Positions 6,317 to 29,023 of a stretch of DNA of 37,125 nucleotides are shown here, piece by piece. Each line of letters opens with the position of its first letter. Position 1 is the stretch's first letter. The notes beneath the pieces were generated by a model. The model did no database searches and was not told where the DNA came from. It worked only from the letters and a program-made list of their open reading frames with translations. Both the position numbers and the translations under genes were made by a program. This stretch comes from Bigelowiella natans CCMP2755. Its lineage: Eukaryota > Protista > Cercozoa. The stretch lies in the NCBI GenBank assembly GCA_000320545.1, contig ADNK01001090.1:1-37125 (forward strand), given 5' to 3'.

Positions 6317-7386
6317 GATGGAGCCTTCGGAATTATGGAGAGGGGGGGTGTCTACAAGCGCCAGTCATTCGGTCATTTAGGAAAGTTTTTATTCATAATT
6401 TGACCAAGTATAGTTGTTCCCTTTCTTTGACTACTTGTTTATGTTGCAGGAAAGTTTCGTGACCAATTTTGATTTTGCAGTGGAAGGACCTACACATCCA
6501 GTAAACTTCGTTAAATTCTGTTCAAAAATGTCCCCTGTCGGAGCATGTCACAGAGCGCATTGACTACATCAGCAGAAACTATCAGTACAGTTTTTCGTTG
6601 CGACAAGTAGCATTTCTGATGTGTAAATACAAACGAATCGGATGGGGATGTTGTGCAGCAAGTCGCTTATATCCAGGGATGTCGAAAGTCTTAACTCATG
6701 GCGTTTTGTATTTACGACATCATCGGCAGCCTCAATCCTAAGTTGGGGAACTCTTTGAGGATCTCAATTTAGGTAAATCCATGATCCCAAATAGCGCTCC
6801 ACAAGAGCGACCCGCTCTCATCTCGTGTCCCACAAATTATTATTTCGCCTCTGTTTCTAGACCCTGGATCAAATCCTAGGAAATAAACCCAGCTTTTTAT
6901 GAGAATGTTTCAGTTACCTACGAGTACGCGGAAGGGGTACTGTACTACCAGTGGGGGGTAGGAAAGTATTTTCACGCATTTTCCGTGTTCAATCATAGAC
7001 GGAACTGAGATGGCACGATGATTTTCCACCATGAAAGACGCTAACAGCTCGGCGGGTGTACGCTAAGCAGAACAGATCGAAAAAAATTTCAGATAAAGTT
7101 GATGCAATCGGATAAAGCGAACGTCGTCACTTTGGGATGTCACTTGCCAAGCATCCCATTACTGATGAGCATTTTGAGGTATTTACAAGATTTCTACTTA
7201 TGTAGCAATCCGTCATACGACCCCAACAATGATGCGAATTCTACTGTCAATATTTTTTGTTTTTCAATTATTTTCCCCTCTCTAACCCTAACCCTAACCC
7301 TAACCCTAATCTTTTTCTTTTTAACCACGGCGATCCAACCAGGCATTAGTAAAGGCCAACCTCGAGACATGTATGGATACAAATAC

Positions 7387-7515: not shown

Positions 7516-7753
7516 CATAATATGGGGGGAAATACAGGCGTTTCTCAACGATCGAAATGATAAAAAATGGAAGGTAACTATTGGTAAACGATATAAGAAG
7601 TATACTTTCAGATTAGAAGATTATCCTAAATTTACTGTTTGCTCAGATGTGCATACCGAGCAGAAGAAGAAGTATGCGCAACATCGTCGAAAGAAACACC
7701 GCCAATATTTAAAAAATCTGTCGCTGTCCTCCTTCTCTTTACCGGGAAAGTAA
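6317..7753 (+). CDS. Possible divergently transcribed multi-exon gene of unknown function
   Basis: Several short coding-like segments with splice-like boundaries (ESFVTNFDFAVEGPTHP; EINPAFYENVSVTYEYAEGVLYYQW; DFYLCSNPSYDPNNDANST; EIQAFLNDRNDKKWKVTIG...). No family recognised and the exon chain is unresolved. Confidence 0.3.
7282..7309. repeat. Interstitial telomere-like (CCCTAA/TTAGGG) repeat, ~4.5 units
   Basis: ctaaccctaaccctaaccctaaccctaa read directly. Confidence 0.8.
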
Positions 7754-8139
7754 TGCTGAGACTCTTTCGTTATACTTCATCTATCGCTAAGTTATAATGC
7801 CTTCATTACGTCGTACTCATATTTGAATTTCTCTCATCGAACCAAGGAATTATAAAAGGCGCAATCGATTAAGCGATTCGGTTACATACTGCAGAAGTAT
7901 GAATTGACAGTGCGCATACACGTTGTAGAAGCCTGCATGCGCGTACGACGGCAACTGCTCTCACCTATGAATTGTGGGTTGTGGGCTGGTTTGGTTCTGA
8001 TCATGACGTTCAAACCCGCCGGACAGTCGTCTAAACGTAATTTACTGCAACTTACCATGAGGGGAACAAAGCGCGGGCTACTGTACCGGTCAAAACACCA
8101 CAACCCGAGAACCCGCAAAACTCTCCCCTAGCCCACAAC

Positions 8140-8833
8140 TCATGAAGCATCACCAACACAAGCACACGCTGCTAAAGATGGGCAGCACCTCCGAGGGAAC
8201 ATCGGCCCTCCACCTCGTTCAACCACGATGGCACAAGATGGGCCGGGACCAGAAGTGGGCTGACTGTTGTTCATCAGAAAATGCGATGAGTGGAAGACAC
8301 TTCGTCGTGAAGGTGTGCATGCACACGTGTTGTGTGAGCATCTGGCGAGTGTCGTTGGTGATTTGATTGCACGTGTCATTTTGAACAAGAGCCATGCTCA
8401 CAATGGACACAGCAATGCACACACATGTCACATGCATTGTGCATTGCACGTCTGTCATTTGAAGGCCACAGTGGACAAAGATGAAGGTGAAGGGCCTGTG
8501 TTGCTCATGGACTTGGATTCATCAAATGACACACGAATGATCTCCGACACATCACGTGTTCAATGCAGCCCATGCGAGCAATGCGTCATCCACGCAGGAG
8601 ATGTCATGGTGTCTGCAGGGGTGCCATTCAAATTGATCCGCTCCATCACCTCGCGTGTGGTCCGCAAGAGAAAACTGTCGGAAGCAGGCATGTCAGACAC
8701 TCAGACTCCTCCACATCATTCGTCGTCACCATCGATGCCATCGACATCATCGTCGCCATCTGGCGGAACAAACTCTGCGTTCATCACTTGTCATCAACCT
8801 GACATCACTTTGTCTGGATCCCCTGAGTTTTGA
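8140..8833 (+). pseudogene. Degenerate ORF (possible transposon passenger) with no Tyr and excess His/Cys
   Basis: ORF 8267-8833 (188 aa) has zero Tyr and reads VHAHVLCEHL...SHAHNGHSNAHTCHMHCALHVCHL, as expected if TAY codons became CAY/TGY. In-frame TGA just upstream. Confidence 0.45.
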
Positions 8834-9009
8834 TTGCAACTCACAATGGACACAGTGATGTCATGCACAACATGCACATGGTGTTGCATGTCTGCAATCA
8901 CGACTCATCATCAGATCATGCTAGCACCACCAATGGGAGCAGCAGCTGTCAGGATGATGATGATGATGATGATGATGCTGCCGCTGCTGCTGCTGTGGCT
9001 GCCATGATG

Positions 9010-9142
9010 GACATGGCAATGCCATGTGGGTTGCACATGTGACATTACGTGTCCACAACAAGCATCCCAAAAAAGGTCCTACACTCACAACAGACATGGT
9101 GACACCACATGTGTTGCACATGTGACATCACGTGTCTGCAAT
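9010..9142. repeat. Two 50-bp direct repeats (9010-9059, 9093-9142)
   Basis: gacatggCAaTGccaTGtgGgttgcacatgtgacatTAcgtgtcCAcaaC vs gacatggTGaCAccaCAtgTgttgcacatgtgacatCAcgtgtcTGcaaT. Confidence 0.9.
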
Positions 9143-9318
9143 TGCTGCTACTGCTGCGGCTGCTGCTACTGGTGACAATGACAATGACAATGATGATGAC
9201 GATGAGGACGATGATTGTTTTGATGCAACTGCGGCAAGGCAACAGCGGCCACATCAGAAGAAGGAGGAGGAGGGTGATGATGTGGAAACGCCATCATGCA
9301 GTGGCAACAATTCCATGA

Positions 9319-11496
9319 TCATTTTTTGCATCTCTTGGAGCAAGGTTTGTCCACGTGGTCAGGCACCACGGGATCGTGCAGAATTGTGATCAAACGGTTC
9401 GTTTCAACACGATTTTCGGTGGTGCTCTCTGAACTCACCAACCCGTCCAAAAAGGCCTCAGGTGTGTACATGGTGGAGTTCAACATTCGCAGATTCACGT
9501 GACAATACAGAGATTTCCTCACCTTCTCCATGCCCAAGCTGGAACGTTCCTTGGGCATGATTCGGTGATTATGCTTGTTGACGCGTTCAACGCTCACCGC
9601 AGTTGGCTTGATGGCATCTATTCGTTTTATCATTTTGGCCAATTCCAGCAGTTGCCCCGCGGAAGCCACTTGCACCCATGCTTTGTAAAAACTTGTCATC
9701 CGCAGTCGCCTCCACAAGGCATCTACTTTGGATTGGACTTGACTGCCATCGGCAACGTCACTTCCATATTGTTTGCGCAGAGTGGGTATGAGTTCGTACA
9801 GAACGCCGTCCATTGCAACTAGAGCATCATAATCGTCTTTGATTTGAAATTCTCTCAGTCCCAATTGCTTGCCGTATTCACACACTGAGTTTCTCATGTC
9901 TGGCGTGCTGCGCAGACGAAGACGACCGGATATTGGGTTACTCACAATTGGCAATATCAAAAAATTCAAAGCGAAGGACACTGTGTGTGCAACTCGGCAG
10001 AGTCCAACCCTCCGTTCTCGCCCCATCCATCTGTCCATGGCAATTTCATGAACATAATTTTTTGTTCTATCGTCGAAAGGGTTGGACTTTCTTTCTTTCC
10101 ATTCAAGGATGTCGTCGATGAGAGCACGATACATGGGACTGATCCAAGATATGTGAACCTCGTCGCTGCCGAGGTATGCTATTAATTTCGACACAGGCTT
10201 CAACAACGCATGCAGAGAGCTAGCCTCCGTCCAGTATTTGAAATCTTTAGCTAGCTCTTGGATTTCCTTCATCTTTTCAGGGTCGCCTTCCACCCAATGA
10301 GGAGAGTCAACCATCTTCATCACCACAGGTTGGTTCTGGATCATCACGTCCAACATCAAATACGCATATCCGAACCTGGTGTCTGGGAAGCTTCTGGGTT
10401 TTCTCGGTTTGCATGGCATGCTTTGAGAAATCTTCTGCCAGGCTTTATATCCCTTCCCACTCAGGTACGAAGAGTGACGTTTGGTTCTGCTTATTATTTC
10501 TTTGAACGGCGCCACTCTGCTGGCCAAGTCTTCAGCCAACAGGTCGCACACGTGCGAAGCGCAACCAATCGCGCTTATCTTCGGATATTTCTCCTCCACT
10601 TTGAAAAGTGCGTTTCTCATGTAATTCACGTTATCCGACACCACAGCGGCAAACACTTCCTGCACTTGTTCCACGTTTCTTTTGCCTTCACTTGACAGTA
10701 TGTTGTCATAGAGCCTGAAGTGATAATCCACGCTGTCCTTTTCCTCTTGCATGATGGACGTGATGAATGATGCTCTTCCTGATGACATCGCTGTGAAGTT
10801 CACAACTTTCGAGTTATTGGAGGAGTTTTTCCATCCATCCGCCGCAAGTGTCTGCATATCGTTTGGGCTCAAGGAAAGTAATCATCCATCCTTTGATGCA
10901 CATGGTCGTTCAGTATGTTGAGCCATCGAGTTGACAAAGTCTTCTGACATTTGGGAACGTACTTCACGAATCCAGGTCGCAGGGCTTCGATGAAGTCGAG
11001 GAAGTAAGGACTCTTTATCAAATCGAATGGAAGTGCAGACCCAACAATGAATCGGGTGAGATGAAACATGACAATGGATGCCTCCGTTGGTGTGCATTTG
11101 TCCATGTAATGAGAAATGCCGGTAATTCCCTTTCGTTTTCGAGACCGGGTCGAAGGGGCAGATGCAGTGTCAAGGTTATGAAAGATCTGCAACCTGTCCC
11201 TTATCGCATCTCTCTGTTCTGGTTTTAGACCCAAACCGTGTAATTCCTCAAGCACAGACACCGGGGTCTAATCATGAAAAGGGTGTGGACACAATTCTTA
11301 ATGAGCACACACAGGGGCACACACAAGCGTGCATTTTTGCGGACACACGCAAAGATTGTACCTTTTTGCAGACGATTAAATGGTCTATGTCTTTGGATGT
11401 GTTCTTCTTTCGATGAAATATTTTGGAGCAAAAGTTGCAAACCCATCCACCGTTCGATGCGGTGAAGTGAGACACGCCGAATGATGGACGGCCCAT
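9319..11496 (-). pseudogene. hAT-superfamily transposase (BED zinc finger, DUF659-type DDE core, C-terminal dimerisation motif) with one frameshift
   Basis: Exon 1 11496-11362 (WVCNFCSK...IDHLIVCKK, BED-like); GT-AG intron 11361-11268; LPFDLIKSPYFLDFIEALRPG; frameshift at ~10870; TLAADGWKN (D1), AVVSDN (D2), GCASHVCDL (CxxH), DTRF, PTAVSVERVNK...KERSSLG...LYCHVNLRML (E and dimerisation region). Confidence 0.9.
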
Positions 11497-11679
11497 GCAG
11501 AATTAAAGAGAGAAGAGGCGAGAGAAGAAAGAAGAGAGAAGCGTGGATATAGCGTGGACTGGTTTTGGCGGGAAAATTCGAGAATATTTTTTCGGACGGG
11601 AAAATATTTAAATTTTTTTAGGTAATATGTGACAGTGAACTGGCACCAGACGTCTGATTGCATTTGCGTGAGACGGCTC

Positions 11680-11747
11680 TAAGTTCCGGAACTTACAAAT
11701 CAGTCATCGTAACTTACGGTAATTTACGTAAGTTACGTAACTTACTG
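11680..11747. repeat. Palindromic subterminal repeat array / probable transposon end
   Basis: Perfect palindromes taagttccggaactta (11680-11695) and gtaagttacgtaacttac (11728-11745), plus cgtaacttacg and gtaatttac between them. Confidence 0.8.
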
Positions 11748-14204
11748 TCGGGCGTAAGATACCATTCCAAGGTACATGTATAGTGGCATCACAAACCGCT
11801 GCAATTTCTTTGCTAAAGGCAACGATTCGAGGCCGTACGACAAGTCATTTCTGTTTCATCTCGAACGGATTATCATACGGTAGAAAAAGTGGGTATCCAT
11901 CCACTTTCCACTCGGGCTTAAGGCGATTTTCTGCAATTTTGCACTAAACCTTTGTGATTTCCAAAGATATGCCCTGAATTCACACCCAAAATCTTGGAGT
12001 ACCCAACCTTTTGGATAAAAAGCTTACGATGTCCCGCATCTCTTGGAAGGGAAGAATCGCAACATCCAAAAGTCCAGCGCCCTCCGTGCATTCTTACGAA
12101 GAAGTAACATGATTTCAAGACCCGTGAAGTGAGTTCAAGCTAAGCGATTCCTTGCTAGCACCTTGGGAGTCTACTTATTTAATGAGATCCAAACAAAGAT
12201 ATGCTCTTCTAACAAGTTCTTCTTTCAGCGGAATCATCGCCGTGGCTATGGCCATGCTGTTTATACTTGCAATCTCCGCCATCATCTCCTCGAAAAAAAG
12301 AATTAATCGAGTTACACCTTATACTGGCTCAGGAATCAGGTAGATTCTTTCTTCCAACGCAATAGTTGCACCCTTGCTTGAAAGGTTTTCGAGCGTGGTC
12401 AATATTGGTTTTGTGTTCACAAGCAGACTTCGAAACGGTCGCATTCTTCGGCATCCAGTACACTGCAAGACCACAGCTCCAAAACTTCAAGCATGTCTGA
12501 TGGAGTAGGCGCTGAAATTCAGTTCCTAAAGGGGCTACGCGAAAAGACAGTTCCAAGTATTGCAATATCGAAGATACCATTTGACCCATCTTGTCTAGTG
12601 CAAACTTCCGGGCGAATAATGTTGCTTCTCCTTGATCCTCCCCAAATTTCAGAGGTGAAGGTTCTTAAAAATCCGACTGATGATTCCAGCGTCGCCATCT
12701 TCAGATTCCGAAAGTACATTGACAAAAGCTACACAAGTGCTAATTTATGGGGATTATGACATGTCCATTGATCCATAGGCCCAGTTTCTACAATGTGGTT
12801 GACTTGGAGCAAGAAGTAATATGAAACCATATTTATTCAAGGACCATTAAACTTCGTCGTGAGAGCACATATATAGACACATGAATTACGAGGAGGAACG
12901 CTTTTATGAACAGTTCCTTGTCCGAAAACATGTCGCAGGTCGACGGAATGAGCATGGTTGATATGGAGGGCACAATCACGGCCACAGAAGTGGTATAGTT
13001 TGTACTCTTTTTCCTTTCCTAAATAAGGATTTGTCTTTTAAATGTTTGCATTCTACAAGCCTACTGATTTGATTGTCGCTTGCAAATGGATTCTAGACAG
13101 CTCATTTCTCAGAAAGTGGAGTCCCAGAGACCATCGAGGCAAAGTAGGGTTATACTTCTTACTTACAGGATGTATTCGGTTACTTTTATACGAATAGGTA
13201 CAAAATGAAGAACGATGAAGAGTGGGATCGGTTAAATTTTCCATTTTATAACTGTTCACAGACGGGTTTGATCACATTTATTTGATTCTGAAATATACTC
13301 TAGATTCATGAGATTCATGGAACGTTATGCCCAGTCTCATGGATTATCGTTCGTTCCATCCCCAACAAAGATACTGTGTGTAGACAGCAAACACCGCAAG
13401 AAAATACTTTTCTTCATACTACTCTTTCGCGCTTTGTATTCTCCACTAACGATGGCCTTATTTTTTGAAGATACGACATGCTCGCATCTGAAGCTGAGGA
13501 GGCAGCCCTTGACCCAAAGGACTGGTAGTGGTAATTACAAACAGGAATGCATCACTCAAGACTATGCACTTTTATACAATTTATTAAGACACAACGTTTA
13601 TGTATTTACATGGTATATGAGTTCACACATCATAAAATTAGTCTAGCTGCGGTGCTGGCATGTTATTGAGGCGACGCCGTGTCGATTTTGAAATACATTT
13701 ACTTACTAAATCGTTCGTCGTCGCATGAATGCCAAACACGCCCCATGAAGCAGCAGAGAGATAAAAAATTCTAACTGCTCGTCGCCGATGTGTACCCTAT
13801 GCAGCAGACACCCGCTAGCGTGGTTTTCCCTAAAATGTTTGAATGCCTCGCCGCAAATTGCCGCACACACCGTCCAGATTCTGTCACAACGTAGCACGTG
13901 GCATGCAAGTGCAATGAGTGGATGAGCGCCGACAGCAACAAAGACATGGCCGGAGTGCATGCCCACAGCCATGCATGCACAATGCGGCATTGTTGCAAGC
14001 GTCAACTAACATGCTAGCTAGACAGTTGCACGTAGCGTCCTTGAAGCCAAGTGATGAGTTCACTCATGTGTGAACATGCATTCATGCGAACGCACTTGCT
14101 GGTGTTCCAAATGATGAATGACAACGCCACACTGCCACATGCACATGCTGGACATGCATCAATCGCACGTGGTTGGAAGATGCCTCAAATCGAACCGCTA
14201 CGTC

Positions 14205-14256
14205 TATGTGTGCATGTACATGTGTGTACGTACATGTGTACATATACATATGTGTA
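14205..14256. repeat. Degenerate alternating pyrimidine-purine array (26 units of TA/TG/CA/CG), probably a former (TA)n microsatellite
   Basis: ta tg tg tg ca tg ta ca tg tg tg ta cg ta ca tg tg ta ca ta ta ca ta tg tg ta. Confidence 0.7.
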
Positions 14257-16859: not shown

Positions 16860-18256
16860 GCCGAGGAGCAGTTACTCGCGCATTGGAGTGGTGAACTGAG
16901 TTTGGGAGCGCAGACAGACAGACAGACAGACGTCTGTCTTTCTTTCTTTCTTTCTTTCTTTCCACGAGAAGCAGCAAGAAGTTGTCGGTTGTTGCTGGAA
17001 GGTCGTTGTCTTCATGGAGCAATTCCCACCCAATTTTGCCCAAAATGATGTGTGCGTTGATGACAGTATGACAGTCAAGATTTGTTGAGCAGCAGCATGC
17101 CAATTCTTCGTGCGACATCACCTGGTTGATGTCTCTCTAGTTTGCAACGTCGCTGGCCCTTGCAATTTTCAGCACACGCCGACACGCCGCTCATGCCCCA
17201 CATTTTGTTTCCCTGCTGTCGGCAGCAGCAAAAATTGCGAAAATGCGAAACGTGAAAGTTTGCCCACTGACGACCCACTGCTGAAGCAAATTGCTAGAGC
17301 GACATGGTGAAAGTCCTGGGCACGTCACACGTCTCTTGTGTGCTTGGTGGTCGCAGACTGATTGTGTCACACCTCTTCGCTTCAATTTGGTTTCACCTTG
17401 TCTTGATCCCGTTCGTTTCGACTGACACCCTTTTCGTTTTCTTCATTTTCATTCGTGCGCACCGCACCAATCAACGCTTGCGTTCGTCCTTTTGGAGATC
17501 ACTGGCTGAGCACTTGTTTGTGCGCACGTGACATTCGCCGTGATGGTGTGACAATGCACACAACAACATCACGTGCACCACACGTGTGTCACGTTGCGCA
17601 TTGTCTGCAATGAACATTGCTGGCCAGCTGGATCGATCTCCTTGTGGTGTTGCAGCAAAAACAGCGGCCAGTCTAGCAGTGGAGTGGTCATTGGTCGAAT
17701 CTGTGTTCAATTTTGGCCCAATTTTGCCAATGAAGACTGAGAGACGAACCAGCTGCAAGGTTCACTGCTCGGATGGACAAAAGCGCACAGCGCGGTCGAG
17801 GCGACTGCTAGACTGACTGAGAATTGACCACATGCCCGATCCAGTCCGGGACGTGTTTGCCGTTTCAGCCCCTTCAGCACGTCATTTGGTGCAGTGCACT
17901 CGATCTCGCCTCACATGTGCACTCTCCTCCCTCTCATTGCAATGTTGTCACATCATTTGCATTTGCACACACATGTACACTCGCACACACGCACTTCTAG
18001 AATGGAAACCAAAAATGCCAAAAGTCAAATATGTGCACAGACTGCACTTGCACAAAATATGGTCAAAATTGCATTTTAAGTCAATACTAATGGTAAAGTA
18101 AGTTTACATCATTACAGGGCGCATTGGCCAGGTTTCTGAGGAAGCATTATTTTCACTTCCTATTTTCTACAGTAGTCTAATGCTTGGTATTCGCCCTAAA
18201 TTTACTATGCATCCCATTTTTGGTAATTAAGGCTGATTTCGCAGTTATCACGAGAT

Positions 18257-19301
18257 TTATTTACCTAGCACCCAGGGGTGATTCTCAATTTGTTCTAGAG
18301 TTGGACGGGAAGTGGGCTCATGATTTAGCAATTTAGCAATTAAATCGATCGCAGCATCCGAGGGTGTTCTTTCGTTGGATGATGTGTACCCATATGCAGT
18401 AACTAATTGTTTCACTCCTTTAAGACCAGATGTCGCGTACCTCAATGCCACCTTACCATTTTGACTCTCTAGATCGTACAGGGGATGTCCACAAAGGATT
18501 GTGAACAGCATACTTCCAAGAGAATAACAATCAGCCTTGAAGGGTTCAAATGGCCTATCATCGAGGATCTCAGGTGCAGCATAATTTAATTTTCCAGTCA
18601 AAATATTCTTTAGCCTTTCTCCTTGCTTTGACTCTCGTGCGGCACCGAAGTCACAAAGTCGCAGCTCTGATGTGTCGGAATTGATTAGGACATTCTCCAG
18701 AGACAAATCGAGATGCGCGATTCCATTAGAATGAAGAAATTTCACAGCTTGGAGAATCTTCTGAAAAGTTGTACGAGCATCAGTCTCCGAGAATCCTCCC
18801 CTCTCGTGGACCATCTTAAATAAGTCTCTGGGAACAAATTGTAAAGCAATCTGGATTTGCTTTTCATCCTCTGATGACTCCAGCAGTTCGACAATATTAT
18901 TGTGACCTCCAATTTCTTGTATTTTCCTGTAAAGTTATTTATATTAGGTAGAATTCTTTGATTAGTGTGGGGGGGATATCTCATGATTAAAATTACCTCA
19001 ACAATTTGGCTTCGCTACCCGGGCTTTCGGTTCCGCTTACTCGAAGCTTATCGCTCGTCTTTAGAACCACTTTCCTTCTCAAGACCTGATCCTCTGCAAG
19101 AACTACTTCACCAAAAAGGGACTTATGCAAAAGCTTTCTTTTTACGTATCGATTGCTCTTGGCCGATGGAGAGGTAGCTGGGGACCTCCTTTTCTTCATC
19201 ATTCTTTTCACTCGTACGGGGCTCCAACAATCCTTCTCGCCTTTGGTGATGGGTGAGTATATAATGTCCATCGGAGTGGTGGGGTCTACAATATTTGCCA
19301 T
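18257..19301 (-). CDS. Ser/Thr protein kinase, CAMK-like
   Basis: Exons 19301-18997 and 18926-18257 (GT-AG). SLFGEV, VVLK, HNNIVELL, HLDLSLEN catalytic loop, DFG, GKLNYAAPE, DCYSLG, RPTLEQIENHPW. Confidence 0.93.
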
Positions 19302-20565: not shown

Positions 20566-22186
20566 GTGGGTGAGTTGCTGCCGAAAAGACACCGGTTGAA
20601 AGCAAAAGTCCTTCAGCATAATTTAGTATCTTCAATACAAAAGAGCAAACATTGTCGAAATTCTCATTCCATCTGCGCAGAAGATCGCTACATCATCCAA
20701 TGGAAAGGAGATGGAGTCGAGGGATACACTTCCCCCTTCCGTCACATGGAGTTCCAGAATGCATTCGCAGCTTCTAGTAACAGAACTAATGCTATTAAAT
20801 TCCAGGATCTCGATGTGAATCCATCAAACGAGAAGCAATTGCTGCAATTACTGAGAATAGAGCATGCTGCTGCTGATGATGATAATGATGACGATGGCGG
20901 AACCAACTCGATAGCTTCTCGAATTTATTTGGCTGAAGCTTCTCAAAGATGTGCTAGTGTCCGATCAATTTATCACGTTCTTGCATGTGGAGACAGCTTA
21001 GAAGCTTGCGGTGATGAAGCTGCTAGTAATTTCAAGATTTCAACCTTCAGTTCTGGTTCTTGGTGTATCAGAGTGAAGAATTTAAACTCAAGCATGCGTT
21101 CACTAGAAGAGTCGACAGTTCTGAGTTCAATGTCAGGCTTCTTCCAGCTTTTAGATGGGCGTGTGGATCTTACTCATCCTCAGAACCTTTTCCACGTTTG
21201 GCAGGGCCTAAGTGGCAATGCAAATGACAAGTTATCACCATTTTTGTTAACAAGACAGATTGCTACGGGATTTGATCTGTCATTTTACAAGCCAAACACT
21301 CGCGAGTGCGTGACTTCAACACCTTTGGATCCAATTGCTGCATTCATCATGGTGAACGCGGGACGTGTGAGCAGAGATGTGCATGTTCTCGATCCATATG
21401 CTGGGAGCGGCTCCGTCCTCCTTGCTGCCTCCGCAGTGGCGCACAATGTGGTGACCATAGGGATTGATAGGGACGAAACAATTCATTTTCCTTCCATAAT
21501 TAAGGACTTCCATCATAGATCCTTAACTCCTCCCTCGGGTCTGATCAGGGGTGACTTCAGAAATGCCTCTATAAGACAACAGGTAGTTAATTGCTCGCAT
21601 CAAATGAGGAAACCAAAGAAATATATGTTCGAAATCATTTTCTGTGTTCTGTTGAAAATATGAAGGCGAAGAAAAGCGCGCTATCGGCAACACTATCGTT
21701 ATCATCCGAAAGTAGCTCCGCATTCCAAGGCTTCGACGCCATCATAACCGACCCTCCATATGGAATTCGGGAGCGGCTTGACTCGGATCCATTGCTTGAC
21801 CTCTTCCGAATCATCGCTCTTGAAAATGAGAACGACGTACGTTGCACCATGCAGACCCAACAACATAAGGGGAGATTTATTAATCGTTGTCGTGAATGAT
21901 GATGAGTATGATATTCCGCTCCTAAATTATCGGTACCTACCAAAATGCTGTCGTTTTTTTTAATGTGGGATTTTAGGTACCATTGCTCAAAATTGGTGGA
22001 CGGTTGATAGTTTTTGTTCCTCGTCTTGAAAGAAGAGGTGTTAGTGTACCGCCACAGTTGAATTCCAGTTTGCTAAAGCAAGCCGAACTGGATTTAATTG
22101 AAGCTATTCGACAGCCCCTAGAATCCCCAGGGCTATGTAGATGGTTAATGATATTCCAGCGTCGTCGACAAAGCCGCGACCAGTAA
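20566..22186 (+). CDS. TRM11-like SAM-dependent RNA amino-methyltransferase (tRNA m2G10-type); 5' end uncertain
   Basis: THUMP-like region (WCIRVK...GRVDLTHP), TSTPLDPIAAFIMVNAG, motif I VLDPYAGSGSVLLAA, motif IV FDAIITDPPYGIRE, LLKIGGRLIVFVP in the last exon. Confidence 0.8.
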
Positions 22187-23430: not shown

Positions 23431-24101
23431 TCACTGCAACAACTTCTTCCTATCGATTGCAAACACGTATTTCTTTAGCGGGAGGGTGATTTTGCTGTTG
23501 ATCGTGCGCTTGTTCTTGCCTTTCTTCTTCTTTTTCTTCTTCCCCTCCTCCGCATCGCTGCTTCCGCCTTTGTCACCCCCTCCCCCTTGCGACTGGATGA
23601 GGTCCTCAGGTATCTTGTTCACGAACGAAACCTTAAACTTGCCCGTCTGCCCGAAGCTGGAGGAAATTGTACCTTCCAGCCCACTGTCCAGGCGAACCTT
23701 TAATCCCATGAATTGCTCCATATTCGTCTCTTTGGAGAACAAACCTTTGCCGATGATGGTATAGTCGTCCTGCAGCCTCTCTACGCTCCCCACTCGCTGC
23801 CGAAGCTTGTAAATCTGTGCATCGCCAACATCAGTCGTTTTCAGGGGAGGGGAACAGGATGATTTGCTTCCACGACTTCTTCTACCACGACAGTACAGCG
23901 AGCACTTATATAGCTGCTATAGGCCCTTGCGTGGGCAGATTACCTTGAGTTTTTCAAGGGTCTCAGGATCGTACTTGAGGGATGTTAGCAGCTTACCGCT
24001 AAATGCAATTCTGCACAACTTTATAAACATACGCATCGATTGTAGATGAAGGAGGGATAGGTAATATTGCGCGCATAGATATGCACTACACTCACACGCA
24101 C

Positions 24102-24144
<43 letters not shown>

Positions 24145-25033
24145 ATTATGTATGATTATTATATGCTACCTTGGCATCCGTGCTGACATCTAGTTTGGAT
24201 CCAATCACCATGCTATCTGGGGGACAGGTTACCGGCTTCTCGAACCTTTGTTATTGGTGCCGTCATCGTCATGAGATGTGGTGGGTCATGCTGCTGTTCA
24301 CAGGGAAGAGTCGTCGCCGAAACTCACATGCATAAATACGTGGAAGAAATGACACATAAATATCTGCAAAGCACTCAGGGAAGATCGAGGGCATCCTGTC
24401 AACATCGCGCATCATGACTACCATCAACCATCATTATCATCATCATTTTCGTTGTTGTGGATGTTGTTGTTGCTGCTGCTGCTACTTGAGAAGAGCAAAC
24501 TGTGTTCCAGGAGGATGGTCCTTGCTATCGGGGATGAGGCGGCTATGCCACGCGTAGTCGCTGTCCATATTGAACTCACTCGGATACTCCGTCCCCTGGT
24601 ATTGCTTTGGTACCTTCACGGTGCACAAAAGAAAGAGAGGAGAGAGGGGCAGGGGAAAGGAGTAGGAAGGAGAGAAGAATATATGGACTTGCCAATCATA
24701 ACAACCCGCAATCGCCGTCACCATCACTATGTAGATACATGCACGTTTTCATTGAGAGAGCAGCTTGTACTTGGAATTCGCAAATTGTTAGTGTGGCATT
24801 TGTGATATTAGCTGTTTTCAGCATCACCAATGCCCACTCCCAATATCATTAAATTCATACCTTGCCCTTCTTTTTTTTCTTTTTGTTTTTCTTCGCATCC
24901 TGATCGTCCTCCTCTCTGTCCTGTGGTAATATGGGGGATGGTGGTGGCATTAGGAAGAAGTAGGCGGTTATGACGTGGAGCAACCAATAGCACGTACGTG
25001 TGAACATATTAACTCATGATGCATGCATGTCGC

Positions 25034-25070
<37 letters not shown>

Positions 25071-25847
25071 GATCGAAAACAACGCTTATTCGCTCGGTCA
25101 CGGCAATATGTAGAGAGACAAAACGATGGCTACATATTGTCAGATTGGCAATCACGCACAGCGTCTACCTTTCCCCCTCCTGATTGTCCCCTCCCCCCCT
25201 TCTCCGCCTCCACATTTTTGCCAAAGAAAAGAGCCGACGCCTGCGATGCGCGGACATAAAATTGACCTTCATCGGACTATTAATGTACTTTGACATGTGC
25301 GTGTGATGAAAGACAGCACTGATAGTGGCAGTAGTAGTAACTACTAAGGAAAAAGGATGAACGCATTGCCGAAGTCGCTGTCGTCGTCATCGTCATTTAT
25401 TACCATGACCGTTGCGTGACCGATCGTACAATGGAACTTAGAGTCACTTTTGACGTCCCCTTTGAAAAAGCGCACCTAATAACGAAGAGAAGGGGGTGGA
25501 GGGACGAGGAGGCGGAAGCTGCTGAGTGCGGCTAGGTGGGTTCTTCTTACAGGGTGAGGGGACTAGATTCGGGCCATAAAGGAAGGCTTTAAAGGCATTG
25601 TGATCGATGATCACTATCATAGTCATCATCATTAACATCGTAGTTATGACTACTACCACTGCACCACCACCTCGAAGCTTGATGGAGGCAGGCTCTACAC
25701 CACTACCAGCACTAGTAGTAGTAGTACTACCTACTACCTTATTTACACAGGCGACCGCTGCTTGGATGGTTGGGATGACCTTCGGCGAACAGGCAACTCC
25801 TGCCGAAACGTAGCACGGAATACTTCAAACATCCACACAAATCTTAA

Positions 25848-25914
<67 letters not shown>

Positions 25915-27115
25915 GTGTATGAAATATATTCTATTTATGGTAGTGCTGCCAATTCCATATATTGCTGCTGCTGTTATTATTCTCAGCTGCTCTTTGTTTT
26001 ACCACGCTCAAGCTGCGAGGCGTCCAGGCTCGTGACACAGATCCCGACACGGTCTCCCTGCGACGCCTTCTTCACTGGCTTACGGAACATCTGCATCGAT
26101 TTTACCTGCACAACAATAGCACGTAAGAACCAACAACAACAACAACAATAATAACAACAACAATGCCGATTGGATTGATTGTGTTGTCCACCAAAATCAT
26201 GGGGTTCATCAGTGCCATTTACCATACAGCTCCTTCTATCCTATTATTCACAGTATTATGCCGGGTTGCAACTAGTTTTACATCGACATTGTTATCATTG
26301 CGACTATAATTAATCTATTTGCTCATATTGCTCTCCTCCTCTTCGTCCTTCTACCTTCCTCTCGATCCCAAGGCCTGTAATCTCTATGAGATCATTGACA
26401 TGTACTGTGCCTTCCAACACCGTCCCCGTCATCACCGTACCCTGCCCTTTTATCTGAAAGCAATGGTCGATAGCGAAGCGGAAATTGCCCCGAGTCACTC
26501 GCTGCGGCACCTGGGTGGTAGGAGGACGCATTATAATAATAACATGAAGCTAATAATGATTCTTCTTCTTCTTCTTGTTCTTGTTCTTCTTGAGCTCCAA
26601 ATGACGGTTTAACCTGAAGTGTGTTCACAAGCGTCTTTACGAGCAGAGAGATGTCCACCGTGTCGTCATTCGCCGACTTCTTCGGGCCTTCTTTATGCAG
26701 GAGGCCACCCCCTGGGGCAGCCACTGTTGTGATCATTGGAATGTCTTTGCCGAACTGAAAGATATGAAAGGAGGAGAGAGAAGGAGAGAGGAGGAGGAGG
26801 AGGAGGAGGAGGAGGAGGGCGTGAGAAAGAATTAGGTGAAATCGCATAGTAAGCGGACAACTACTGCTACTGCTGGAATGTATGTGACACAGCAGCAGCA
26901 GCAGCAGCAGCCCACCACCACCACTACTACCACCTTTGTCCTCTTGAATACAGCCTGCAATTTCTTTTTTTGCTTTGCAATTTTCTCCTGACGCTTATCT
27001 TTGGGGATGAGGTCCACCTTGTTCAGAGCGACGATCATGCGCTCACTGATCAGACGAAAGAAGAAAAGCAAGGGAGGGGAGAAATCAAACCACCAGACGT
27101 ACATATCCTCAATTT

Positions 27116-27147
<32 letters not shown>

Positions 27148-28290
27148 TGTGTATGCGTGTGGGTACGTGCGTAGCTCTATATTTACCCAATTGCTGATTC
27201 TCTTCTCTAGAGTCTTCTTCTTTCTTTCTTAGTAGGTGAGTGGTAGTTTGTCGTTACCTCAGGATTTCGCCAATGACGAGGCACTCAGCTGTCTGCGTCT
27301 GAATGCCCTTGTTTATGTCGATAACCAGGATCATCAGGTCAATTATTGCCGCCCCTATTATCAATTCAAAGCCGCACGTGGGGGTTAGCGTAACAATAAC
27401 ATTTGAGGAGCTGCTATGATGACAATCAAACAGTAATGATGCCAACGTTTCATGCAGGTAGTACTACAGCAACGCAGGTGCTCTGAGTTGTGCAAGCCAT
27501 AGCTACCAATAGTAATACCGCCAATGACTGTCTTTATGAGGCTGGCGTGGCCAGGGCAATCGACAAGGGTGAATTGGATCTTGTCGTAGCCCTCAAAATC
27601 CTTCTGCCTGTGCTCTGGAATATCGATTTGAAAGTTGGAGAATCCCAAGTCCAAGGTGATCCCGCGCTTGCGGCTGTAGTAGGTTATCATTCAGCTTCTC
27701 AGGTGATCAATCGTATAGATTCTTGACAGGTGACAAAGTTCATCACGGAAGAGGATGGTGACGACGATGATAATCAAGTTATGTTGGGGGGAGATAGCAT
27801 ATGCATTCCACGTATACACGCACACACACACACACGCACATATACATGACATATTTGTAGACACAAAGGCATCGCAGTGGGTAAAAGAAGGCCATTTGAA
27901 TGCAATGTCTTCAATAAGAAAGGTTAATTCTCGACTACTACTACTACTCCTACTACTACAACTGCGAAATAGTGATCATCGATGAAAGCACGGATGATAT
28001 CTTTGGACTCCCAACGATATATTCGAAGTTCCACCGATCACGATTGTTAACTATCCTAGATTCGTGAAGGCTTCGAGGCGCTAGCAGAAACCATCTTACC
28101 TCTCTGGATGCTTATCGAGAGCTGCGGTGGAGAGCGTGGTGCTGAGTGCTTTCACCAGGCTAGTTTTCCCGCTATCAACATGACCCAATACGCCTATGTT
28201 GACATTGAGCAGCTTTTTAGAGGTGGCCGTGGAAGCCCCCTCACCACCCGCTTCTCCGCTGCCTCCGTCCTTCTTCGCCTCCGGGTCCAT
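23431..28290 (-). CDS. EEFSEC: Selenocysteine-specific translation elongation factor (eEFSec/SelB), multi-exon
   Basis: NVNIGVLGHVDSGKTSLVKALS...AALDKHPES, RGITLDLGFS, QFTLVDCPGHASLIKTVIGGAAIID, KGIQTQTAECLVIGEI, LNKVD, FAIDHCFQIKGQGTVMTGT, KSMQMFRKPV...GDRVGICV, FHCTIGHATVM, VIGSKLD, CRIAFSG, GTISSSFGQTGKFKV. Exons join via GT-AG introns. Confidence 0.97.
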
Positions 28291-29023
28291 GGCTTCGCTT
28301 CCAACAGACAGCTTGTGGGACTCGGCCTCTGTCCTCCTCCGGAAACACGAAGGGATGAGTTCCGTTTTTGCATCTGCGACAACGAAAATAAAGCTTGTTG
28401 GCTTGTCGCAGTTTACATACTTGCACGGCCCTGCGGCTGCCTGCATCCAGGCATGAAAATATGCTAGGAATATCGTATAGTGGGACGTCGCCTTTCGCTG
28501 CTGTCGTCGTACCGAGTTCGGCGGTCGCTAAAGTGTAGCTTCCACATAGCCCAGGATATTTATGGCTTGATAAATAGTCTAAATATATCGATCTCATTTA
28601 CTAGAACCCAGCAAGCATGTCGGAACAAAGCATACCTGCTGGCTCTCGGGATTGATTCCTCCCCCACAGGTTCCGAACATTTATGTTTATCCCTGCAGTT
28701 CTCTCTCCTTCCTTCCTGGCTGCTGCTGCCACATTTGCTCCTGTACGAAAGGTGTCTGCACAGTAGCAGACGAGTGCCGTCTCGACGGCTGGTAATGAGG
28801 AGAATGGCTCTCGGTACGACTCGCGACCGCTGCCAACAGACGACGTTGTTCGGGTTCTGGTCGACGATATTTCTTATGGTATCTCAAATGAAGTCAATTC
28901 TCTAACTCCTGCAATATCATGCAAATGATATGGTGTTATGATCTGCTGTAGGTCGCTACCAACGACCAATATTCTTCCCACACAAGTTGGGCATCGTCTT
29001 GCAGCAGGGAGGGGGCAAAGGGA

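What the first reader, a model, noticed from the sequence alone, without database searches (positions are those of the whole stretch)
8175..9466. TpA-erased patch on a hAT transposon: candidate 'reverse-RIP' A-to-G hypermutation system
Seen: by my reading there is no TA dinucleotide in 8175-8921 (747 nt) and only 5 in 8175-9466 (8922, 9046, 9080, 9149, 9167), four of them preceded by C. AA, AT, TT and CG remain common and CA/TG are conspicuously enriched. Flanking DNA is TA-rich, and TA returns gradually inside the transposase from 9467. Known: fungal RIP (CpA->TpA) creates TA; 5mC deamination removes CpG; eukaryotic 6mA is typically at ApT. None of these gives this pattern. Inference: a process converts TpA to TpG (CpA on the other strand) to near saturation in kb-sized patches of TE or repeat DNA, e.g. 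a targeted DNA adenine deaminase (TadA/ADAT-like enzymes favour a 5' T), Pol-eta-like error-prone synthesis, or a miscoding modified base. I know of no described eukaryotic genome-defence pathway with this signature.
Basis: partly seen in the sequence, partly recalled or inferred. Interest (0 to 1): 0.95.

Follow-up and report, generated by a model that had tools for sequence, protein, structure and literature searches.

The report
TpA hypermutation scar on algal transposon
A cut-and-paste transposon in the alga Bigelowiella natans has had almost every dispensable TA pair mutated to TG or CA by a hypermutation process already reported for this alga in a 2026 preprint; this copy adds that the transposase gene kept mainly the TAs whose loss would change its protein.

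Summary
Contigs from four studies match it, so it is not an artefact. The genome is Bigelowiella natans.

The direction is shown. In eight broken fragments of the same hAT, 72 of 75 window TpAs read TG, CA or CG, while CpG is untouched.

The process is not new. Mettrop et al. (bioRxiv 10.64898/2026.01.13.699255) measured TpA>TpG/CpA hypermutation in mutation-accumulation lines. This scan also found it earlier on many other pieces of this genome.

What this locus adds:
(1) The 'gradual return' of TpA in the transposase is largely selection. Synonymous TpAs are nearly gone, while Tyr and ATA codons are kept. An intact 699-aa version is transcribed in another sample; the window copy is frameshifted.
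(2) CTAG is largely spared.
(3) ApT is a roughly 90-fold weaker second target, visible in dead copies and in the preprint's own table.
(4) The saturated core lies where two spliced transcripts converge.

The enzyme is not identified. DNA adenine deamination is the most likely chemistry (about 55%).

The parts
8175..9466 (.). TpA-saturated core: non-coding 3' part of the hAT plus the last 148 nt of the transposase ORF
   Evidence: 5 TA vs 79 expected, CA/TG o/e about 1.95; identical in contigs of independent runs; 8786-8835 and 8899-9804 shared with copy C2587; 8220-8785 has no clear homologue elsewhere, so its membership in the element is inferred from its position
7951..8174 (.). Left (3') end region of the element, partly eroded; GTAABTTAC-like subterminal motifs at 8037-8055
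   Evidence: 94% match to C1451, where all 9 TAs are CA/TG; joined to transposase sequence in internally deleted copy C2758; motif positions
9319..10872 (-). 3' ORF of hAT (DUF659) transposase with D194, D262, CxxH (286-289) and E611 (numbering of P0001); synonymous TpA stripped, Tyr and ATA kept
   Evidence: Pfam PF04937 E 5.6e-14; catalytic columns conserved in 40 homologues; codon counts
10873..11267 (-). 5' part of exon 2; 1-bp deletion near 10878 (frameshift, stop at 10869-10871) and 15-bp deletion near 11159 relative to the intact version
   Evidence: Alignment to L060; a paralogous contig carries the extra base; P0003, 177 aa, is the JGI model aug1.22_g8477
11268..11361 (-). 94-nt GT-AG intron; only 3 TA, two of them at the splice ends
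   Evidence: Joint 11267/11362 in RNA-type runs X4 and X17, absent from DNA runs
11362..11496 (-). Exon 1 from the ATG, with BED-finger-like CxxC
   Evidence: zf-BED E 0.0019, below cut-off, on P0001
11571..11765 (.). Right (5') end region, TA-rich (o/e 0.92), with a cluster of GTAABTTAC subterminal repeats at 11688-11762; no TIR or TSD established
7647..8915 (+). Last exon of a spliced host transcript (upstream exon ends at 7371) that reads into the patch, converging on the transposase transcript (which reaches 9190-9226); most likely 3' UTR beyond a stop at about 7797
   Evidence: X4 contig 15 covers 7647-8915 with 0 differences, and its loose end equals 7342-7371; reading frame inferred
9007..9141 (.). 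Twin 52-bp repeats (9007-9058, 9090-9141) differing by three reciprocal CA/TG swaps and one TA/CA; similar looser pair at 8397-8458 / 8840-8898
16873..17976 (.). Second saturated tract (TA o/e 0.09; 4 of 6 survivors CTAG), downstream of a minus-strand kinase gene
13801..14207 (.). Partly converted tract (TA o/e 0.38; all 9 survivors have a 5' C or a 3' G)

Best explanation
The patch is the footprint of the B. natans TpA-directed A:T>G:C mutator on a hAT (DUF659) transposon. SHOWN: each TpA is resolved about equally to TG or CA, repeatedly and independently in different copies. CpG and most AA are left alone, ApT is hit weakly and CTAG is resistant. SHOWN statistically: inside the transposase, TpAs that can be lost silently are almost all gone, while Tyr and ATA codons remain. 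INFERRED: the element's lineage was exposed to the mutator while its protein was under purifying selection, so selection sieved the ORF, while the unconstrained 3' non-coding part went to saturation. Dead fragments then lost the protected TpAs too, and the frameshifted window copy has begun to (three Tyr hits). INFERRED, with weaker support: the mutator also works harder beyond the stop codon, where two transcripts converge, than in the gene body. Chemistry, INFERRED (about 55%): a host deaminase converts dA in TpA to inosine, which is read as G at replication. The confidence given is for the footprint-plus-selection reading.
For: 72/75 window TAs read TG (33), CA (36) or CG (3) in 8 fragments. 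A>G 166 vs G>A 49; G>A at CpG 7/260. Less-mutated copy C1412 keeps TA where the window has TG/CA. Codon 693 reads Tyr in P0001, His in P0004 and Cys in the window. GTA+TTA+CTA: GTG+TTG+CTG is 7:71 vs 68:131 in host ORFs (p 1e-5); NNT|A: NNC|A is 11:84 vs 103:201 (p 1e-5); 22 Tyr and 16 ATA codons kept. In dead copies 24/24 Tyr and 12/12 ATA sites are lost. Intact 699-aa transcript L060 has the same sieved codon use and a TA-free 128-nt 3' UTR. De novo TpA>TpG/CpA was measured in mutation-accumulation lines.
Against: No mutation at this locus is listed among the preprint's de novo events (no scaffold_22 entry), so activity here today is not shown. Host codon controls are ORF calls, not curated CDS. 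Generic TpA avoidance exists in coding DNA (host junction odds ratio 0.42 vs 0.10 here). TA-free tracts around dead fragments extend well beyond hAT homology, so the element itself may not be what is recognised. No deaminase with a targeting fusion was seen.
Confidence: 0.88

Rival explanations
1. Position, not foreignness, is the target. The mutator acts on zones where transcripts end or converge (dsRNA, R-loops or termination chromatin), and transposon debris merely accumulates there.
For: The saturated core lies between a plus-strand spliced transcript reaching 8915 or beyond and the minus-strand transposase transcript reaching 9190-9226. Window and L060 differ by about 1%, with only 5 TA-type changes among about 60 ORF TAs, yet two neighbouring 3' UTR TAs were resolved in opposite ways. 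The other two window tracts also lie at gene 3' flanks (orientation partly inferred from ORFs).
Against: The preprint's main hot region is a 186-kb transcriptionally silent virus insert. L060's 3' tail may be an assembly chimera of two copies (P0001 and P0004 differ at the C-terminus). The ORF itself shows heavy past exposure. An earlier follow-up (s1-417337) argued against termination zones; not retested here.
Confidence: 0.25
2. The lesion is on the T, not the A: an oxidised thymine (5-formyl- or 5-hydroxymethyl-uracil) or another modified base in TpA mispairs with G.
For: Double-stranded substitution data cannot tell A>G from T>C. Both the main (TpA) and the second (ApT) target place the mutated T next to an A. 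Miscoding by 5-formyluracil is from my own knowledge.
Against: Only one sub-threshold, stop-interrupted Tet_JBP hit in the genome (23.5 bits vs cut-off 34.9), from an exon-by-exon search of limited sensitivity. ADAT2/3-like genes are present (preprint).
Confidence: 0.2
3. A low-fidelity polymerase (Pol-eta-like) resynthesises these tracts.
For: Pol eta favours A>G at WA (own knowledge). The weak second context suggests graded rather than absolute specificity.
Against: AAA, AAC and AAG are nearly untouched (4/335) while TA is saturated. De novo events are 210/211 transitions, with no transversion tail.
Confidence: 0.12
4. CpG deamination, or an ancestrally TA-free sequence style, with no TA loss.
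For: CG o/e is 0.61 in the patch; CpG decay also yields TG/CA.
Against: TA/TG/CA polymorphism between copies is pervasive and polarised. CpG sites change at background rate (7/260). Reciprocal CA/TG swaps between twin repeats fit a TA ancestor, as seen directly in C1412.
Confidence: 0.02
5. Assembly or sequencing artefact.
For: Only assembled contigs, not raw reads or a second platform, could be laid.
Against: Zero differences over the patch in contigs from separate studies (2018-2025), RNA-type and DNA-type.
Confidence: 0.01

Closest known systems
TpA hypermutation of Bigelowiella natans (Mettrop et al., bioRxiv 10.64898/2026.01.13.699255)
   Same: Same species, same substitution (TpA>TpG/CpA on both strands), same kb-scale TpA-poor, CA/TG-rich tracts. 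The preprint already infers transposons as targets from Pfam enrichment (DDE endonuclease, reverse transcriptase).
   Different: The preprint measures it in integrated viruses and has no copy-to-copy test on a transposon. Its main text has no mention of CTAG, hAT or context and states that all GC-ward hits are at TpA, although its Table S2 lists 4 at ApT. No codon-level selection sieve is described. Here the target is transcribed and spliced.
Fungal repeat-induced point mutation (RIP; RID/DIM-2)
   Same: Dinucleotide-specific, strand-symmetric, near-saturating transitions in repeats and transposons (own knowledge; also compared in the preprint).
   Different: Opposite direction (RIP makes TpA from CpA). 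RIP creates stop codons, whereas this process removes them and opens spurious ORFs such as 8267-8833. RIP needs duplicated DNA and a sexual cycle; the preprint's hot NCLDV region is single-copy and was hit in clonal lines.
TadA/ADAT2 and ADAR adenosine deaminases; APOBEC editing of retroelements
   Same: A>G (inosine) outcome with a 5' T/U preference, as argued in the preprint.
   Different: No enzyme is shown here. The change is fixed in chromosomal DNA on both strands rather than on one strand of an RNA or cDNA. CTAG resistance and the ApT second target are not explained by a 5'-T preference alone.
hAT superfamily, DUF659 (PF04937) transposases
   Same: DUF659 domain, DDE triad, CxxH, N-terminal BED-like finger; DUF659 is assigned to hAT in PMC3985635.
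   Different: No TIR or 8-bp TSD found; no Pfam hit to the hAT dimerisation domain; the window copy is frameshifted.

Membership tests
B. natans TpA hypermutation | Occurs in B. natans | tested here: met
   The cluster of the transposase holds EP00466_Bigelowiella_natans_P009087 / jgi Bigna1 133769 aug1.22_g8477, which matches the window's 5' ORF
B. natans TpA hypermutation | Substitutions polarise as TpA>TpG/CpA on both strands | tested here: met
   72/75 lost: 33 TG, 36 CA, 3 CG; three-state Tyr693
B. natans TpA hypermutation | Localised TpA-poor, CA/TG-rich tract | tested here: met
B. natans TpA hypermutation | Target is foreign or selfish DNA | tested here: inconclusive
   The core lies within a hAT, but tracts round other fragments exceed the hAT homology, and the origin of 8220-8785 and of the other two tracts is unknown
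B. natans TpA hypermutation | Raised de novo rate at the locus | tested here: inconclusive
   No scaffold_22 event in Table S2; one TA>CA at 10815 in runs X4 and X13 could be a paralogue path
B. natans TpA hypermutation | Caused by an A-deaminase (proposed only) | not testable with these tools
   Seven CDA-fold loci and one A_deamin locus are present; no activity data
Fungal RIP | C>T at CpA/CpG, creating TpA | tested here: not met
   A>G 166 vs G>A 49; TpA is destroyed
5mC-deamination decay | CpG>TpG/CpA between copies | tested here: not met
   7/260 CpG strand-sites vs 49/1414 of all G sites
Pol-eta (WA) signature | A>G at AA as well as TA | tested here: not met
   AAA/AAC/AAG 4/335
hAT superfamily | RNase H-like transposase with DDE triad and CxxH | tested here: met
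   D194, D262, C286xxH289 and E611 conserved across 40 homologues; PF04937
hAT superfamily | N-terminal BED finger and C-terminal dimerisation domain | tested here: inconclusive
   zf-BED 18.6 bits vs cut-off 20.6; no PF05699 hit
hAT superfamily | Short TIRs and 8-bp TSD | tested here: inconclusive
   None found; the left end may be truncated at 7951 because two other copies share further sequence there; subterminal repeats at both ends
hAT superfamily | Dispersed copies | tested here: met
   Fragments on at least 7 other contigs; the window is the only near-complete copy found

The most novel reading that the evidence does not exclude
The mutator is guided by convergent or antisense transcription to the 3' ends of expressed elements. 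CTAG is protected by more than neighbour preference (for example a site-specific DNA mark). This hAT is a lineage that stayed expressed and functional under the mutator by shedding nearly every silent TpA, as an adaptation or as a domesticated gene. The weaker codon signal in an unrelated homologue (L062) would then point to the same process outside B. natans.
Probability: 0.15. Interest if true: 0.75.

Novelty: already known. Interest (0 to 1): 0.4.

Why it matters
A eukaryotic, dinucleotide-specific A:T>G:C mutator is the mirror image of RIP and would be a natural DNA adenine editor, but it was reported in 2026, so this window does not discover it. The locus is useful as a test bed. It gives direct copy-to-copy evidence on a class II transposon, which the preprint only inferred. 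It shows that synonymous-site TpA loss can reveal exposure in genes that still look intact. It supplies a specificity fingerprint (TpA much greater than ApT, AA ignored, CTAG resistant) against which any candidate enzyme, such as ADAT2 Bn78255, can be assayed.

Tried and rejected
Assembly artefact, CpG decay, RIP and a Pol-eta WA signature were rejected as above.

A TIR/TSD search by repeat finder and end-to-end alignment gave nothing convincing. ORF 8267-8833 has no Pfam hit and is best read as a by-product of stop-codon loss.

Deciding whether a 5' C or a 3' G slows the reaction, from product choice in copies, was inconclusive (13 vs 11 events).

Enzyme screen, presence or absence only: 7 CDA-fold loci that look by my reading like dCMP deaminase, guanine deaminases, ADAT2 and ADAT3, with no fusion seen within about 1.5 kb; one A_deamin locus; no convincing TET/JBP; no MT-A70 or MPG hit. 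These blanks do not show absence. The PDB search was blank.

Homologue L063 looked TA-poor but fits ordinary coding avoidance.

The planned test of CTAG sparing on the preprint's de novo positions needed contig C3187.

No search was made with a joined spliced model. ORFs were searched by reference, and the full-length query was P0001 as returned by the tool. Exons were joined only inside scripts for codon counts and alignment, with the frameshift left as it is. The one viral stretch held (L041) was only counted.

Full report
1. Observation. The counts are exactly as reported: no TA between 8173 and 8922, and five in 8175-9466 against 78.8 expected, with CA and TG at about twice expectation. 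The left flank has TA o/e 0.96. Logan contigs of runs from four studies match the window with no differences across 8175-8915, 9005-9179 and 9150-9618; 8945-9004 was skipped as a repeat. These are assembled contigs, not raw reads, and no second platform was available. Two more tracts lie at 13801-14207 and 16873-17976.

2. Organism and element. The transposase cluster contains the JGI model Bigna1 133769 (aug1.22_g8477) of Bigelowiella natans; the assembly is 91.4 Mb in 3736 contigs. The gene is on the minus strand: ATG at 11496, a 94-nt GT-AG intron at 11361-11268 (joint seen only in RNA-type runs), stop at 9319. It has DUF659, which PMC3985635 assigns to hAT. D194, D262, CxxH and E611 are conserved across 40 homologues. 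The window copy has a 1-bp deletion near 10878 that splits it into 177-aa and 517-aa frames. An intact 699-aa version, about 99% identical, exists as a transcript in another sample (P0001/L060). GTAABTTAC repeats cluster at 8037-8055 and 11688-11762, and an internally deleted copy joins 7951-8036 to transposase sequence. The element therefore spans about 7951-11765. I found no TIR or TSD. It is the only near-complete copy found in the assembly.

3. Direction. In eight fragments on other contigs, 72 of 75 aligned window TAs are changed: 33 to TG, 36 to CA, 3 to CG. Overall A>G is 166 against G>A 49, and CpG changes at background rate, 7/260. Conversely, copy C1412 keeps TA in 8899-9272 where the window has TG or CA. 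Independent resolution of one ancestral TA is seen three ways: codon 693 reads Tyr, His or Cys in P0001, P0004 and the window; 3' UTR sites 9216-9222 differ reciprocally among window, C2587 and L060; and the twin repeats at 9007/9090 differ by three CA/TG swaps.

4. Why TA returns in the ORF. Of the TAs left in the coding region, 22 are Tyr codons and 16 are ATA, which cannot be lost without changing the protein. Those that can be lost silently are nearly gone: GTA+TTA+CTA vs GTG+TTG+CTG is 7:71 against 68:131 in host ORFs of the window (p 1e-5), and NNT|A vs NNC|A is 11:84 against 103:201 (p 1e-5). The intron keeps three TAs, two of them at its splice ends. L060 shows the same pattern. In dead fragments the protected sites go too: 24/24 Tyr and 12/12 ATA. 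The window copy differs from L060 by three Tyr>His/Cys changes at TA. I infer that the ORF was heavily exposed while under purifying selection. A real spatial gradient may exist as well, since only 5 of about 60 ORF TAs differ between window and L060 while two adjacent UTR sites were each resolved differently, but L060's tail could be chimeric. The host controls are uncurated ORFs.

5. Transcription. A spliced plus-strand transcript (exon ending 7371, then 7647 to at least 8915) runs into the patch, and the transposase transcript runs to 9190-9226. The core thus sits at converging 3' ends and is transcribed, unlike the silent virus region of the preprint. This is one locus, and contig depth cannot rank expression. 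The RNA label of X4 and X17 is a guess, supported by their splice joints.

6. Specificity. In 24 tracts (26.5 kb) from the loci held, CTAG survives at 0.93 of background density against 0.03-0.14 for the nine other NTAN classes (odds ratio 12). The tracts were picked by low TA, and in alignments 4 of 7 CTAG were hit, so CTAG is resistant, not immune. A second target is ApT: 55/377 strand-sites in dead copies against 36/1009 for other non-TA contexts (p 9e-12), while AAA/AAC/AAG give 4/335. The preprint's Table S2 lists four T>C hits at ApT in the virus region, although its text says all are at TpA. This gives a TA:AT rate ratio of about 90 (36-336; ApT density taken from 3.5 kb only). By hand count, a 3' G lowers de novo hits to about 0.45 of availability in that same 3.5 kb. 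At the measured rate a tract needs some 3e5 generations to lose 97% of its TAs.

7. Mechanism. Best reading: a host mutator converts A:T to G:C at TpA on either strand within kb-scale tracts, and selection decides what is left. I put DNA adenine deamination at about 55%, a T-side modified base at about 20%, a low-fidelity polymerase at about 12%, and the rest to other chemistries. The genome has seven CDA-fold loci and one A_deamin locus, none with an obvious targeting fusion nearby, and no convincing TET/JBP. This screen is exon-by-exon and weak. What marks a tract is open. Around dead fragments the tracts extend beyond hAT homology, so foreignness, repetition and position at gene ends all remain possible.

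8. Prior art. My own paper search found Mettrop et al., bioRxiv 10.64898/2026.01.13.699255. In mutation-accumulation lines of B. natans, 230 of 231 mutations in two viral regions are AT>GC at about 1000 times the base rate. TpA-poor windows cluster genome-wide, DDE and RT domains are enriched in TpA-poor CDS, and ADAT2 is proposed. Two further searches found nothing else on it. Earlier notes of this scan describe the same scar, and CTAG sparing, on many other pieces of this genome. A look-up for the synonymous sieve returned only a Tyr-free dead transposase.

9. Verdict. The feature is real and correctly read as TA>TG/CA hypermutation on a hAT, but the process is already known. The additions (selection sieve, ApT second target, CTAG resistance, transcribed convergent target) are incremental and testable. 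Interest 0.4.

Noticed in passing
Preprint Table S2: Four of the scaffold_10 T>C mutations (402688, 416158, 431449, 450385) are at ApT, not TpA, contrary to the text. Plus-strand A>G in TAG (3) is much rarer than T>C in CTA (17), although these are the same context on opposite strands (p about 0.006 on a small composition sample); unexplained.
   Followed up: partly
Preprint Table S2 indels: Many de novo insertions are short and rich in CA/TG/ACA motifs, and similar short insertions or duplications interrupt the dead hAT fragments. Possibly a separate end-joining signature.
   Followed up: no
window 10815: TA>CA in RNA-type run X4, whose contig otherwise equals the window allele, and in DNA run X13; could be a new hit, RNA editing, or the path of paralogue C771.
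   Followed up: partly
L062:374-2452 (SRR27444642, organism unknown): A 38%-identical transposase homologue shows a similar junction bias (NNT|A 18 vs NNC|A 81, odds ratio 0.14), but it also has low CpG (0.55) and a TA-rich 3' flank. L061's 59-nt 3' UTR has no TA. Weak leads to the process outside B. natans.
   Followed up: partly
window 8267-8833 (+): 188-aa His/Cys-rich ORF with no Tyr and no Pfam hit; probably opened by loss of TAA/TAG stops, and likely to be mis-annotated as a gene.
   Followed up: partly
window 8390-8460, 8840-8900, 14199-14256: CA/TG-rich low-complexity runs that look like converted (TA)n microsatellites; they match many other contigs weakly.
   Followed up: no
window 7282-7309: Interstitial telomere-type (CCCTAA) x4.7 run within the plus-strand gene upstream of the element.
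   Followed up: no
window 11683-11734 and 11579-11683: Two short pieces of the element's right end occur separately on other contigs (100% in C2055, 96% in C2064) with unrelated flanks and TA intact; the right end may be composite.
   Followed up: partly
G000:C2607:11363-11530: Sub-threshold Tet_JBP match with two stops; could be an intron-split gene or chance; not fetched.
   Followed up: no
window 20566-21899 (+), 18257-19301 (-), 23431-28446 (-): Ordinary host genes: a UPF0020/Trm11-like methyltransferase and a protein kinase, and a translational GTPase resembling SelB (my reading).
   Followed up: no
L042:1-580: A TpA-free tract lies within about 0.8 kb of the 3' end of a guanine-deaminase-like host gene, again at a gene's 3' flank.
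   Followed up: no
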